Positions 1 to 2,812 are shown, numbered from the stretch's first letter. The stretch is 64,000 nucleotides of DNA from Macrostomum lignano (GCA_002269645.1 NIVC01000037.1:1178001-1242000); one strand, 5' to 3'. The notes: generated from the sequence alone by a model not told the origin. Numbers and translations: made by a program.

Positions 1-2780
1 GTCTGCGTAGAGCTTCAGTTTGCAGTCCGTATGGGCCTCTTTAATCTCCGTGTCCAGGTCGTTGATGTAGACGACCCAGAGCAGGGGAGCCAGCACGCTG
101 CCCTGGGGGAGGCCTTCCTTGAAGATTCTTTCATTGCTCAGGCAGTTGCCGACTCGTACGCGGGCACGTCGGTCGGCAAGGAAGCTCCGGATCCAGCGGA
201 GCACGTCGTTAGGGATGCCGAGCTTTTTCAGCTTGGCGATCAGCCCAGCCCTCCAGACCCGGTCGTAAGCACGACTAAAGTCGAGAAGGCACAGCACTGA
301 CCGCAGGTGTGGGACCGCCTCCAGACCGTCAAAGATGTCCTGGCAGGTGCTCGCGATGAGTTCCTCAGTAGAGCGGCCGCGGCGGAAGCCGGCCTGGGTA
401 CTGCTGAGGCGGCCAGAATTCTCGAGGGCAAAGCGCAGGCGTTGGAGCACCATCCGTTCGGCCAGTTTGGCGATGCTGCTGGTGAGTGCCACTGGGCGGT
501 AGGACTCCGGGTTACTAGGGTCTTTCCCTTTCTTGGGATAGGTATGATGACCGATTTCTTCCATTGCATCGGGCAGTCTCCTTCCTTCCAAGACCGGTTG
601 ATGAGGTCCAGGAGCCTCAGGTCCGTGGTCGGTGGGAGTCTTTTAAGCATGTCGTTGGTAACTCCGTCCGGGCCTGGTGCCTTCCCGGATTTGAGCGAGC
701 GCACAGCGCTGCGGTATTCGGTCAGGCTGAAGGCGGAGCACATGTCGGTGCGTGAGCCATTGCACGTGCAGCTGGAGTTGAGGGCTGCTCTCGCGGCTTG
801 ATTGGTGTGGGCGTCTTGGGGGCCTCCTTTAACTCTAGAGACAGCGGCGTATTGCTGACAGAACAGGTTGGCCTTCTCCAGGTTGGTGCGGGCCGGCCGA
901 GATGGTTCTTGCTGCCCCGTCTTCTTTCTCTGGAGGGAGGCGCCGCTATTTGGTTTGGGGCCATCGCCACGCATCTGGCGCAGAGTGCGGAAAAGGTCGC
1001 TGTTGATGGTGAGCTCAGCTGCCTTCTCGCTCCAGGCGCGGCGTTTCTCCTGGCGGATCACCTTTCTGGAGTTGTTACGGGCCGCTTTGAACCTAGCCAG
1101 GTTGTCGTCGCTCGGGGACAGCTCGGCGACGTGCCGGGCTTCTTTGCACTCCCGGGTGGCTTGGGCGCAGGCGTCAGTCCAGAATGGTTTCGCAGCAGTT
1201 CTGGCCCCTTTGGGTATGTTATGGGCAGCGGCCGTTAGAATGTCGTTACAGATGATGGCGTGAAGATGTGCGAGTTGGACGCCGTGAGTTGGGTAGTCAG
1301 CCCTTTGGCCGTCGATCTTAGTGAGTTCGTCCTTAAAGCTCCCCCAGTCCGCTTTGCGGAAGCACCACGTGGCCCGTGGCAGGTTCTTGCCCTTCCGTGG
1401 CGCTCTGGGGTGTCTCTGGACCGGGAAGGAGATGGGCAGATGGTCGGACCCCAGATCGTCGAGGGTCGTCCAGCCCTCCGCGATGCCTTGCAGGAGGTTG
1501 TTGCTGGTCCAGGTAAGGTCCGGAGTAGATTTGCCTCCTGTTGCTGGGTTAGTTCGCGTATGGTAGTCGCCGTTTGCAAGTCTCAGGTTGCGGGAGGTCG
1601 CCCAGGCTTCCACTATTTTGCCGCGCTCATCTTCGTCTTGGTGCCGGTCCCAACTGCCGTGGGCGTTGAAGTCGCCGGCGACGACGGTGGGGCCAGTGGC
1701 GTTCGGGACCAGATGAAGCGGGGGTTGCCAGGTTTCCCCCCGTTGGTTGCTGGTCGGTGGTGCGTAGAGGGAAACCAGCGTGATCGGCTCCTGGCCTTTG
1801 AGGTGGATGGTGGCGGTGGCGCAGTCTAGCAGTTGGCGTTCGTTGTCCGGCGGCGATGGCGTAGTGTCGGACGCAATGTCGGCGCGCACTAGGATCAGGG
1901 TGCCTCCTCTGGTGTGGGTCGCTTTGTTCGTCCTGTTCTTGGGCCGAGTTATTGGCGGCTTCGAGGCGGCGGTCCTCCGTGCCTGCTCCTGTTGGTTGTC
2001 GGTCGGCTCACGATTGTGTTGCGCACTCTGGGTCTGGGCCTGTGGCTGCGGTTGCGGTGGTTGTGGCCACGGCTCGTCTCTGCGGGTGCAGGCGGTTCTG
2101 CCTGAGCGGCAGCCGCGGCACCACTCCGCCTTATCATTCTTGTCAGCCGGCCAACGGATGCGGCAACGTGGGCGCTTAATCTTGCGGCCGCAGTTTGCCC
2201 ATGGCGTGGGGCAGTTGTCCGCGCTGGCCCCTTCGTTAGGGTTAGCTTCGGGGCCACTGGGTTGGGTGGGCTGGAGAGGTGCCCCCCCTTCCTTGTTCTC
2301 GGTGGCCCGGGTGCCGGCGGCCTCTTTAGGAAGACCGTCGCAGCGCGCGGCGACGTAGTATCCGGTAGGAGGGATGTAATCTGTGTCTCTGGCAAGCTTC
2401 GTTTCCTGCAGTAGGACCGCAGCCGGACGATTGACGTGGAGCCATTTAGCCAGCTCAGTATGACGGCTCTTGACGCCGTTACAGTTGAACTGTAGGATGA
2501 GCTCTGGGCCCGACTCCGCGGTATTCCTCCGGCGGCCGTGCTTGGGTCGGCGGTCAGGATGGTCGCAACCGCCTCGCAGTCGCAGGACTTGTTCAGTAGG
2601 TAGGCTCTCAGCATGGGGGGCGTCGGTCGAGATCTGTTGCCCTTGTTGTTGTTGTTGCTGAGGTTCGGTCTCCATGCACGCAGTATTGGCTCTCTCGCTC
2701 CATATGGAGCATCGCTGATTGTGAAGGCCATTAGTCGCCTCGGTCCTGTTGCGCGGACCGGGGGCGTCCGGGGACCCCAT
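1..2780 (-). CDS. Retrotransposon ORF: 71-aa leader, APE endonuclease, RT (partial); 1-nt frameshift at about 535-537
   Basis: ATG at 2780-2778 is in frame with ORF 240..2861. After IIPIP the RT continues in another frame (PKKGKDPSNPESYRPVALTS...LYAD), restored by one extra base in the GGG run at 535-537. Confidence 0.9.
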
Positions 2781-2812
2781 GGTGTTCGCTCGGAGGGTGC
2801 CTTCTTGTCCCC
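2723..2812 (-). ncRNA. Predicted HDV-like self-cleaving ribozyme at retrotransposon 5' end
   Basis: Folded by hand: P1 GGGGAC(2812-2807)/GUCCCC(2775-2770); P2 GAAGGCA(2804-2798)/UGGCCUUC(2730-2723, one bulge); P3 CCC/GGG; L3 begins UCCGAG; P1.1 CC(2793-2792)/GG(2769-2768); P4 CGCC-CC-CGGUCC/GGACCG-A-GGCG; J4/2 ACUAA with catalytic-type C at 2734. Confidence 0.75.

What the first reader, a model, noticed from the sequence alone, without database searches (positions are those of the whole stretch)
2723..2812. HDV-like ribozyme with an expanded L3 loop carrying the start codon
All five helices of the nested double pseudoknot appear in the correct order (P1 GGGGAC/GUCCCC, P2, P3 CCC/GGG, P1.1 CC/GG, P4, J4/2 ACUAA). 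L3 starts UCCGAG, keeping the U20/C21/C22/G25 pattern of HDV. It then runs 10 nt where HDV has 2, and the last two of these plus the first G of P3' form the ORF AUG (2780-2778). The predicted cut 5' of 2812 is where host receptor coding sequence resumes. Established: such ribozymes occur at R2, RTE and L1Tc/Ingi 5' ends. Unusual here: 16-nt L3, 6-bp P1, and an AUG whose access would depend on ribozyme folding.
Basis: partly seen in the sequence, partly recalled or inferred. Interest (0 to 1): 0.8.

Follow-up and report, generated by a model that had tools for sequence, protein, structure and literature searches.

The report
Retrotransposon ribozyme with oversized core loop
The 90 bases are the self-cleaving "HDV-like" RNA that marks the 5' end of a jumping gene (a non-LTR retrotransposon) lying antisense within or beside the 5' part of an activin-receptor gene; this is a known kind of element, but here the catalytic loop L3 carries nine extra bases that include the element's first start codon.

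Summary
On the minus strand, 2812-2723 folds into a complete nested double pseudoknot: P1 6 bp, P2 6 bp, P3 3 bp, P1.1 2 bp, P4 10 bp, all Watson-Crick. The J4/2 strand reads A-CUAAUG, and AUG 2780-2778 spans L3 and P3'. It sits 32 nt upstream of the ORF of an APE+RT non-LTR retrotransposon.

Rfam finds nothing, but it also misses five clear HDV-like ribozymes that I found at the 5' ends of distantly related elements (35-37% aa identity or less). A covariance model built only from those five ranks 2812-2722 first in the whole window (18.8 bits, E about 0.05). Across the six sequences, 96% of pair cells are paired and 14 of 23 pairs show compensatory changes.

All five relatives have a 7-nt L3. 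The window has 16 nt: the core UCCGAGC plus GAACACCAU, which creates ACCAUGG. The 6-bp P1 and an AUG inside the ribozyme are not unusual in this clade.

This copy has a frameshift, no sister copies could be retrieved, and cleavage is untested. Verdict: a new member of a known kind with an atypical L3, of moderate interest.

The parts
2807..2812 (-). P1 5' strand GGGGAC; predicted scissile bond between U2813 and G2812
   Evidence: pairs with 2775-2770
2799..2804 (-). P2 5' strand GAAGGC
   Evidence: (also found by MFE folding); pairs with 2728-2723
2795..2797 (-). P3 5' strand CCC
2779..2794 (-). L3, 16 nt: canonical 7-nt core UCCGAGC (2794-2788; C2793 and C2792 form P1.1) plus a 9-nt extension GAACACCAU (2787-2779)
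   Evidence: relatives all have 7 nt
2778..2780 (-). First AUG after the cut site, context ACCAUGG, in frame with the APE-RT ORF; spans the last two L3 bases and the first G of P3'
2776..2778 (-). P3 3' strand GGG
2770..2775 (-). P1 3' strand GUCCCC
2768..2769 (-). P1.1 3' strand GG, pairing with C2792 and C2793
   Evidence: P1.1 was not in the covariance model, yet 92% of its cells are paired across the six sequences
2736..2766 (-). P4 hairpin, 4 + 6 bp with an internal loop and an 8-nt end loop
2729..2735 (-). J4/2 A-C-U-A-A-U-G; C2734 is the candidate catalytic cytosine (CUAA as in the antigenomic HDV ribozyme, from memory)
   Evidence: aligned to the CgAAAU of the model
2723..2728 (-). P2 3' strand GCCUUC
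1..2812 (-). Non-LTR retrotransposon: leader, APE endonuclease with a Cys-rich insert, then the start of RT. The ORF runs 2780->243, with a frameshift near 530. RT continues in another frame to position 1 and off the window
2571..2591 (-). VLRLRGG (ubiquitin-tail-like) at the end of the 70-aa leader, where relatives carry a 2A peptide
2814..3458 (+). Host exon: Leu-rich stretch, type II receptor-like ectodomain, TM segment. The kinase exon follows at 4690-5346 (activin receptor type-2-like)

Best explanation
2812-2723 (minus strand) is the HDV-like self-cleaving ribozyme that forms the 5' terminus of a single-ORF APE+RT non-LTR retrotransposon. It corresponds in position and architecture to, and most likely descends from the same ancestor as, the ribozymes at the 5' ends of related elements. 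Inferred mechanism, by analogy with R2, RTE and L1Tc: the element has no dependable promoter of its own and is transcribed as part of a longer RNA. The double pseudoknot folds co-transcriptionally, and C2734 with a bound Mg2+ catalyses scission 5' of G2812. The retrotransposon RNA is thereby released with a 5'-OH and the ribozyme fold at its very end. Translation of the leader-APE-RT polyprotein then starts inside or just after the ribozyme. In this lineage a 9-nt extension of L3 (GAACACCAU) has placed a strong-context AUG at the L3/P3' junction. Initiation there requires the P3/P1 core to be unwound, so processing must precede translation on the same molecule. Shown: the fold, its covariation with five relatives, its position relative to the ORF, the L3 expansion, and the in-frame AUG. 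Inferred: cleavage, the 5' boundary of this particular copy, and use of this AUG.
For: All five helices are present with 27 Watson-Crick pairs. Five relatives (L001, L002, L005, L006, L016) carry HDV-like ribozymes on the coding strand upstream of APE, and the ORF is open through them in L001, L005, L006 and L016. Model R2, built from those five only, gives 2812-2722 as the top hit in the window with filters off: 18.8 bits, E about 0.05, starting exactly at 2812. On the six-sequence alignment 96.2% of cells are paired against 38-50% for slid controls, 14 of 23 pairs change on both sides, and 0 of 500 shuffles reach the observed values. P2 and P1.1, which the model did not contain, are each 92% paired. 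L005 and L006 are about 65% identical over the ORF but 91% over the ribozyme, and their homology begins exactly at G+1 with unrelated flanks. So in this clade the cleavage site is the element's 5' end. The L3 core keeps U-C-C-N-N-G, J4/2 keeps C-N-A-A, and the -1 base is U. The nearest-neighbour cost of a 16-nt instead of a 7-nt L3 is only 0.3 kcal/mol.
Against: No Rfam HDV-type family matches, even at E<=10, although the positive controls also fail. L3 belongs to the catalytic core (PMC4908430), and the P1.1/P3/L3 block is nearly invariant in R2 ribozymes (PMC3774820). L3 is 7 nt in CPEB3 and antigenomic HDV and 8 nt in genomic HDV (bioRxiv 10.1101/2022.09.22.508989). A 9-nt insertion there may therefore kill catalysis. 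The first P1 pair is G-C rather than the usual G.U wobble (also so in L016). This copy has a frameshift near 530, so selection on it cannot be assumed. Only one copy of the family could be examined, so neither the 5' boundary nor the L3 extension is confirmed at family level. The E-value of 0.05 is modest and roughly calibrated.
Confidence: 0.65

Rival explanations
1. Dead relic. The sequence descends from an HDV-like ribozyme, but the 9-nt insertion in L3 (and perhaps the G-C first pair) abolished cleavage. The AUG serves ordinary scanning initiation on transcripts made some other way, or the copy is simply decaying.
For: L3 is core and normally 7-8 nt (PMC4908430, PMC3774820, bioRxiv 10.1101/2022.09.22.508989). 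All five relatives have 7 nt. A weak, imperfect core-like motif in the closest protein relative, L003, would also have a 7-nt L3 (13.2 bits, E 0.53, within the noise range). The copy has a frameshift. An in-frame Met36 lies 48 nt downstream of the ribozyme, where L016 and L003 have their first Met, so the L3 AUG may be secondary.
Against: Every helix is still perfectly Watson-Crick, with no mismatch in 27 pairs, and all core positions (U, CC, G of L3; C-N-A-A of J4/2) are intact. That is unexpected for a long-dead ribozyme in a copy old enough to decay. The insertion lies at the 3' edge of L3, where the genomic HDV ribozyme also has one more base than the antigenomic one. The predicted energetic cost is 0.3 kcal/mol.
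Confidence: 0.28
2. Chance. A GC-rich coding leader happens to satisfy a permissive double-pseudoknot descriptor.
For: The loose descriptor gives several false hits per window. The MFE z-score of the region is unremarkable at -0.31.
Against: There were 0 canonical-core hits in 300 shuffles. It is the top hit of an independent covariance model, with the same boundaries. It occupies the same position relative to the ORF as in five relatives, and covariation includes helices the model did not contain.
Confidence: 0.03
3. The element extends upstream of 2812, with the (CAG)n tract and about 11 nt belonging to it. The structure would then be an internal leader or translation element rather than the terminus.
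For: The window and the M. lignano locus L003 both have (CAG)n followed by CGCYAAY.GTGGGAC-like sequence.
Against: In L003 the CAG runs belong to a long polyQ-coding host region. The best, though weak, ribozyme-like motif in L003 lies about 90 nt further downstream, so the short similarity is probably chance. In L005 and L006 homology stops exactly at +1. The window's CTG run reads in frame into the receptor ectodomain.
Confidence: 0.04

Closest known systems
R2 (and R4, Dong, RTE, Baggins, SART) 5'-terminal HDV-like ribozymes (Eickbush et al. 2013, PMC3774820; Ruminski et al. 2011 JBC, known to me from memory and from the reference list of PMC4870747)
   Same: Nested double pseudoknot at the exact 5' end of a non-LTR retrotransposon. 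It liberates the element from a co-transcript, the ORF begins in or next to the ribozyme, and the ribozyme is reported to promote translation initiation.
   Different: This is a different element type: an APE-type single ORF, with RNase H in the relatives, and not rDNA-specific. R2 keeps a nearly invariant 15-nt P1.1/P3/L3 block, whereas here L3 is 16 nt. R2 variation lies in J1/2 and P4.
L1Tc/ingi L1TcRz (Pr77) of trypanosomatids (PMC3185411, PMC3383444, PMC4035085)
   Same: An HDV-like ribozyme in the first ~77 nt of an APE+RT+RNase H single-ORF element that also has a 2A peptide at the N-terminus of the polyprotein. This is the architecture I find in relatives L001, L005, L006 and L016.
   Different: The protist host and the sequences are unrelated at the level I could test. 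The window element has VLRLRGG instead of 2A. Internal promoter activity (Pr77) is not testable here.
Antigenomic HDV and CPEB3 ribozymes
   Same: Same helix order. The L3 core is U-C-C-N-N-G, J4/2 is C-U-A-A as in antigenomic HDV, and P1.1 is CC/GG. Relatives L001, L002 and L016 have the CPEB3-like L3 ending ACGU.
   Different: Their L3 is 7 nt (8 in genomic HDV), against 16 here. The first pair is G-C here instead of G.U. P1 is 6 bp against 7.
2A-bearing APE-type non-LTR elements of metazoans (Odon et al. 2013, PMC3708506)
   Same: The relatives show 2A, then a PHD finger, then APE in the N-terminal region of a single ORF, exactly as described there.
   Different: That paper does not mention ribozymes (0 occurrences). 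The window element lacks 2A.

Membership tests
HDV-like self-cleaving ribozymes | Nested double pseudoknot with strands in the order P1-P2-P3-L3-P3'-P1'-P1.1-P4-J4/2-P2' | tested here: met
   27 Watson-Crick pairs, no mismatch
HDV-like self-cleaving ribozymes | G at +1 as the first base of P1, usually in a G.U wobble | tested here: inconclusive
   G2812 is present, but it pairs with C2770 (G-C). Relative L016 also has G-C; L002, L005 and L006 have G.U (pair 1-50).
HDV-like self-cleaving ribozymes | Catalytic C at the start of J4/2, followed by N-A-A | tested here: met
   C2734-U-A-A aligns to the C-g-A-A of the model
HDV-like self-cleaving ribozymes | L3 core U-(C/N)-C-N-N-G, with the two bases after U forming P1.1 | tested here: met
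   UCCGAG at 2794-2789; C2793 and C2792 pair with G2768 and G2769
HDV-like self-cleaving ribozymes | L3 length of 7-8 nt (typical of all characterised members I could check, not a formal definition) | tested here: not met
   16 nt here. 7 nt in five relatives. 7 or 8 nt in CPEB3 and HDV (bioRxiv 10.1101/2022.09.22.508989).
HDV-like self-cleaving ribozymes | Helices supported by covariation among homologues | tested here: met
   14 of 23 pairs compensatory, 0 of 500 shuffles reach the observed values, slid controls 38-50% paired. Caveat: the alignment was fitted to P1, P3 and P4, but not to P2 or P1.1.
HDV-like self-cleaving ribozymes | Match to a curated Rfam HDV-type model | tested here: inconclusive
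   No match, but the five clear relatives also give none
HDV-like self-cleaving ribozymes | Divalent-ion-dependent self-scission giving a 2',3'-cyclic phosphate and a 5'-OH | not testable with these tools
   Needs an in vitro transcription and cleavage assay
Ribozyme-terminated non-LTR retrotransposons | Cleavage site coincides with the 5' end of the genomic copies | tested here: inconclusive
   Met for relatives L005 and L006. For the window there is one copy only; composition and the host-frame ORF change at 2813, but no second copy and no 3' junction are available.
Ribozyme-terminated non-LTR retrotransposons | Ribozyme on the coding strand directly upstream of, or overlapping, the ORF of an EN+RT element | tested here: met

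The most novel reading that the evidence does not exclude
The ribozyme is active despite a 9-nt insertion inside its catalytic L3 loop, and the insertion was selected because it puts the initiator AUG, in perfect Kozak context, inside the active-site loop and P3. Ribozyme folding and start-codon recognition would then be mutually exclusive on one RNA: a built-in order of events (cleave first, unfold, then translate), or a partition of transcripts into template and mRNA pools. It would also be, as far as I could check, the first natural HDV-like ribozyme with a large L3 insertion, which would mean that current descriptor searches restricting L3 to a short length (my recollection of the published descriptors, not checked here) systematically miss such variants.
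Probability: 0.3. Interest if true: 0.6.

Novelty: new member of a known kind. Interest (0 to 1): 0.4.

Why it matters
HDV-like ribozymes at retrotransposon 5' ends are well established, so the basic finding is expected biology. Three things add value.

(1) This clade of APE-type elements (ribozyme, then a leader ORF read through the ribozyme, then 2A, PHD, APE, RT and RNase H) is invisible to Rfam. It links two features usually described separately, 5' ribozyme processing and 2A recoding, beyond trypanosomatid L1Tc.

(2) The start codon moves between lineages: J1/2-P2, downstream of the ribozyme, absent, or in L3. That makes the clade a natural series for testing how a 5'-terminal ribozyme fold and translation initiation interact.

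(3) If the 16-nt L3 is compatible with catalysis, it relaxes a constraint that, as I recall, is built into the usual search descriptors and is reflected in the near-invariance reported for R2 ribozymes.

Tried and rejected
- **Rfam:** searches at gathering and E<=10 thresholds found no HDV-type hit. I rejected this as evidence because the positive controls also fail.
- **Whole-window repeat search:** the output was swamped by minisatellites and was of no use.
- **Other copies in the window:** none found by DNA or protein search.
- **Close family copies elsewhere:** a full-ORF protein search gave relatives of at most 37% identity plus a 42% partial hit from M. lignano. A search with a low-complexity-free N-terminal query gave nothing. 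An exact 20-mer scan gave three chance bacterial hits in genome contigs and none in viral contigs.
- **Receptor ectodomain search**, meant to find an uninterrupted allele and the organism: no hits.
- **MAFFT alignment of four ribozymes:** misaligned the 3' halves. I replaced it with model-guided alignment.
- **First narrow model R1** (two near-identical sequences): it did not report the window site when the window was searched with default filters. With filters off (relatives only, window not searched) it ranked the five relatives above all noise.
- **Very relaxed descriptor:** too noisy to be useful, 34 plus-strand and 51 minus-strand hits.
- **Hand-built ribozyme at L003 about 1917-1990 with a long L3:** rejected. 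P1.1, J4/2 and P2 do not fit, and the model's best (still weak, 13.2 bits) match is instead a 7-nt-L3 core-like motif at 1997-2055.
- **Ubiquitin-domain test of the leader:** no Pfam hit.
- **Alternative registers giving a canonical 7-nt L3 in the window:** none pairs.

Full report
**What is there**

On the minus strand the window reads, from 2812: GGGGAC AA GAAGGC A CCC UCCGAGCGAACACCAU GGG GUCCCC GG A [P4 2766-2736] A CUAAUG GCCUUC. This gives P1 (6 bp), P2 (6 bp), P3 (3 bp), P1.1 (2 bp) and P4 (4 + 6 bp) in the order of the HDV nested double pseudoknot. All 27 pairs are Watson-Crick, and C2734 sits at the head of J4/2. The AUG at 2780-2778 is made of the last two L3 bases and the first G of P3'.

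**Context**

The motif lies 32 nt upstream of a long minus-strand ORF (2780->243). The ORF contains an APE-type endonuclease (Pfam Exo_endo_phos_2, 3.7e-16) and the start of a reverse transcriptase. The RT continues in another frame after a frameshift near 530 and runs off the window start. This is a non-LTR retrotransposon, and this copy is not intact.

On the plus strand, immediately beyond 2812, an ORF reads through a Leu-rich stretch into a Cys-rich ectodomain and a TM segment (2814-3458). A kinase exon follows at 4690-5346. Its best solved relatives are activin receptor type-2A and 2B (3.6e-49), and the ectodomain weakly resembles BMPR2. The element therefore lies antisense in the 5' part of a type II receptor gene. 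Whether it interrupts the signal-peptide exon or sits in an intron with an acceptor near 2866 cannot be settled, because no Met is present and the other junction is off the window.

**Is it more than chance?**

Rfam gives no hit at gathering thresholds or at E<=10. A loose descriptor of my own finds the site but also several other sites, most of them AT-rich junk, so a descriptor match alone proves little. In 300 dinucleotide shuffles of the 4-kb GC-rich segment, the loose descriptor hit 5 times. The version requiring the canonical core (U and G in L3, C-N-A-A, GC-only P3, P2 of at least 5 bp, structured P4) hit 0 times.

**Relatives**

Protein searches found only distant relatives: at most 37% aa identity, plus a 42% partial hit from Macrostomum lignano, P0017. 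I fetched their contigs and 43 more loci from metagenomes. Five of them carry unmistakable HDV-like ribozymes on the coding strand upstream of APE:

| Locus | Coordinates |
|---|---|
| L002 | 1565-1626 |
| L005 | 90-156 |
| L006 | 207-274 |
| L016 | 182-249 |
| L001 | 128-190 (imperfect P1.1) |

All five have a 7-nt L3 of the form U-N-C-N-N-G-N.

Rfam detects none of them, so its silence on the window is uninformative.

L005 and L006 are about 65% identical over the ORF but 91% over the ribozyme. Their homology starts exactly at G+1, and their flanks are unrelated. In this clade the cleavage site is therefore the element's 5' end, and the ribozyme is its most conserved segment.

**Independent model test**

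A covariance model seeded on L005 and L006 (R1), run with filters off, ranks the five ribozymes above all noise. Model R2, built from those five alone, was then run over the whole window on both strands with filters off. Its best hit is 2812-2722 on the minus strand, at 18.8 bits and E about 0.05, starting exactly at 2812. This holds despite the penalties for the L3 and P4 insertions.

On the resulting six-sequence alignment the full pseudoknotted structure has 96.2% of cells paired, against 38-50% when partners are slid by 1-3 columns. Fourteen of 23 pairs change on both sides, and 0 of 500 shuffles reach any observed measure. P2 and P1.1 were not part of the model and so are not favoured by the alignment, yet each is 92% paired.

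I conclude that the window sequence is a true member of this ribozyme lineage by descent.

**What is and is not unusual**

- **P1 length:** a 6-bp P1 also occurs in L002 and L016.
- **First P1 pair:** a G-C first pair also occurs in L016.
- **ORF through the ribozyme:** the ORF is open through the ribozyme in L001, L005, L006 and L016.
- **AUG inside the ribozyme:** L005 and L006 have an in-frame AUG within the ribozyme, in J1/2-P2.
- **Other AUG positions:** in L016 and L003 the first Met lies about 20-25 nt downstream of the ribozyme; L001 has none before its 2A peptide.
- **L3 length:** this is the real oddity. The window has the 7-nt core UCCGAGC plus GAACACCAU, 16 nt in all, which creates ACCAUGG.

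L3 together with J4/2 forms the catalytic core (PMC4908430). The P1.1/P3/L3 block is nearly invariant among R2 ribozymes, and its conserved G is needed for activity in Nasonia (PMC3774820). L3 is 7 nt in CPEB3 and antigenomic HDV, and one base longer in genomic HDV (bioRxiv 10.1101/2022.09.22.508989). Known natural insertions lie in J1/2 and P4 (PMC4908430).

The nearest-neighbour cost of the larger loop is only 0.3 kcal/mol, but that says nothing about active-site geometry. The window ORF also has an in-frame Met36, 48 nt downstream of the ribozyme and in the position used by L016 and L003. The L3 AUG may therefore be a secondary acquisition.

**Mechanism**

By analogy with R2, RTE and L1Tc (established knowledge; PMC3774820, PMC3185411), the element is co-transcribed from upstream. 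The ribozyme cuts 5' of G2812. The -1 base is U, the optimum for the genomic HDV ribozyme according to PMC1874588. The processed RNA keeps the fold at its 5' end, and translation starts within or just after it.

With the AUG at the L3/P3' junction, initiation requires melting of the P3/P1 core, so cleavage must come first. This step is inference.

I put 0.65 on the best explanation, which includes an actual or recent processing function. I put about 0.3 on the copy or lineage being catalytically dead because of the L3 insertion, and a few per cent on chance or on a misplaced 5' boundary.

**Caveats**

- Only one copy of the family was available.
- The copy carries a frameshift.
- The model E-value is modest and roughly calibrated.
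- The alignment used for covariation was fitted to three of the five helices.
- The source organism is unknown. The nearest element is from the flatworm M. lignano at about 44% aa identity, which is a weak hint only.

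Noticed in passing
window 2571-2591 (minus); P0017 / L003 about 2160-2190: The 70-aa leader of the retrotransposon ORF ends in VLRLRGG, the C-terminal tail of ubiquitin. The M. lignano relative has LHRVLRLRGG (ubiquitin: LHLVLRLRGG). It sits where relatives L001, L005, L006 and L016 have a 2A skipping peptide (D[IV]E.NPGP). It may be a protease or deubiquitinase release site replacing 2A. There is no ubiquitin-domain Pfam hit, so only the tail is present.
   Followed up: partly
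L001 128-330, L005 90-300, L006 207-425, L016 182-400: A shared architecture in distant relatives: 5' HDV-like ribozyme, then a leader ORF read through the ribozyme, then a 2A peptide, a PHD-like finger, APE, RT and (in L005 and L006) RNase H. The 2A literature I checked (PMC3708506) does not mention ribozymes. Rfam detects none of these ribozymes.
   Followed up: partly
window about 2085-2222 (minus): A Cys-rich insert (CPTPWANCGRKIKRPRCRIRWPADKNDKAEWCRGCRSGRTAC) lies inside the APE endonuclease domain. It is conserved in P0001 and P0017 and may be a zinc knuckle. Its function is unknown.
   Followed up: no
window 2823-2840; L003 1500-1910: (CAG)n lies directly 5' of the element in the window, and several CAG/CAA runs precede the element in the M. 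lignano locus, with a short similar spacer (CGCYAAY.GTGGGAC). This could reflect a target preference for CAG repeats, or it could be chance in CAG/CTG-rich genomes.
   Followed up: partly
L003 1997-2055: A weak, imperfect ribozyme-like core motif (GCG-UCCACGA-CGC...GG, 7-nt L3; 13.2 bits, E 0.53, similar to noise hits in the same search) sits in the closest protein relative. If it is a decayed ribozyme, the 16-nt L3 of the window would be derived.
   Followed up: partly
window about 522-540 (minus): The retrotransposon ORF has a frameshift just after the PRKGK motif at the start of RT. RT continues in another frame to position 1, so the copy is defective or the assembly has an indel.
   Followed up: partly
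window 3476-63547: The window is densely packed with minisatellites: 51 TRF rows (overlapping rows with different periods describe the same array, so fewer distinct arrays). A 31-nt array fills the receptor intron (3476-4729) and creates a spurious ORF at 4449-4721. There is a 4.6-kb purine-only array at 21758-26392 (GC skew 0.8, AT skew 1.0), (GTTA)~480 at 50372-52294, (TAGA)~160 at 12544-13193, and a 42-nt array at 13782-15953 with an inverted partial copy at 47351-47883.
   Followed up: no
L001, L002, L016 L3 loops: The L3 loops of three relatives end in the palindrome ACGU (UUCACGU, UGCACGU, UACACGU). This is the motif reported to drive dimerisation of CPEB3 ribozymes in crystals (bioRxiv 10.1101/2022.09.22.508989).
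   Followed up: no
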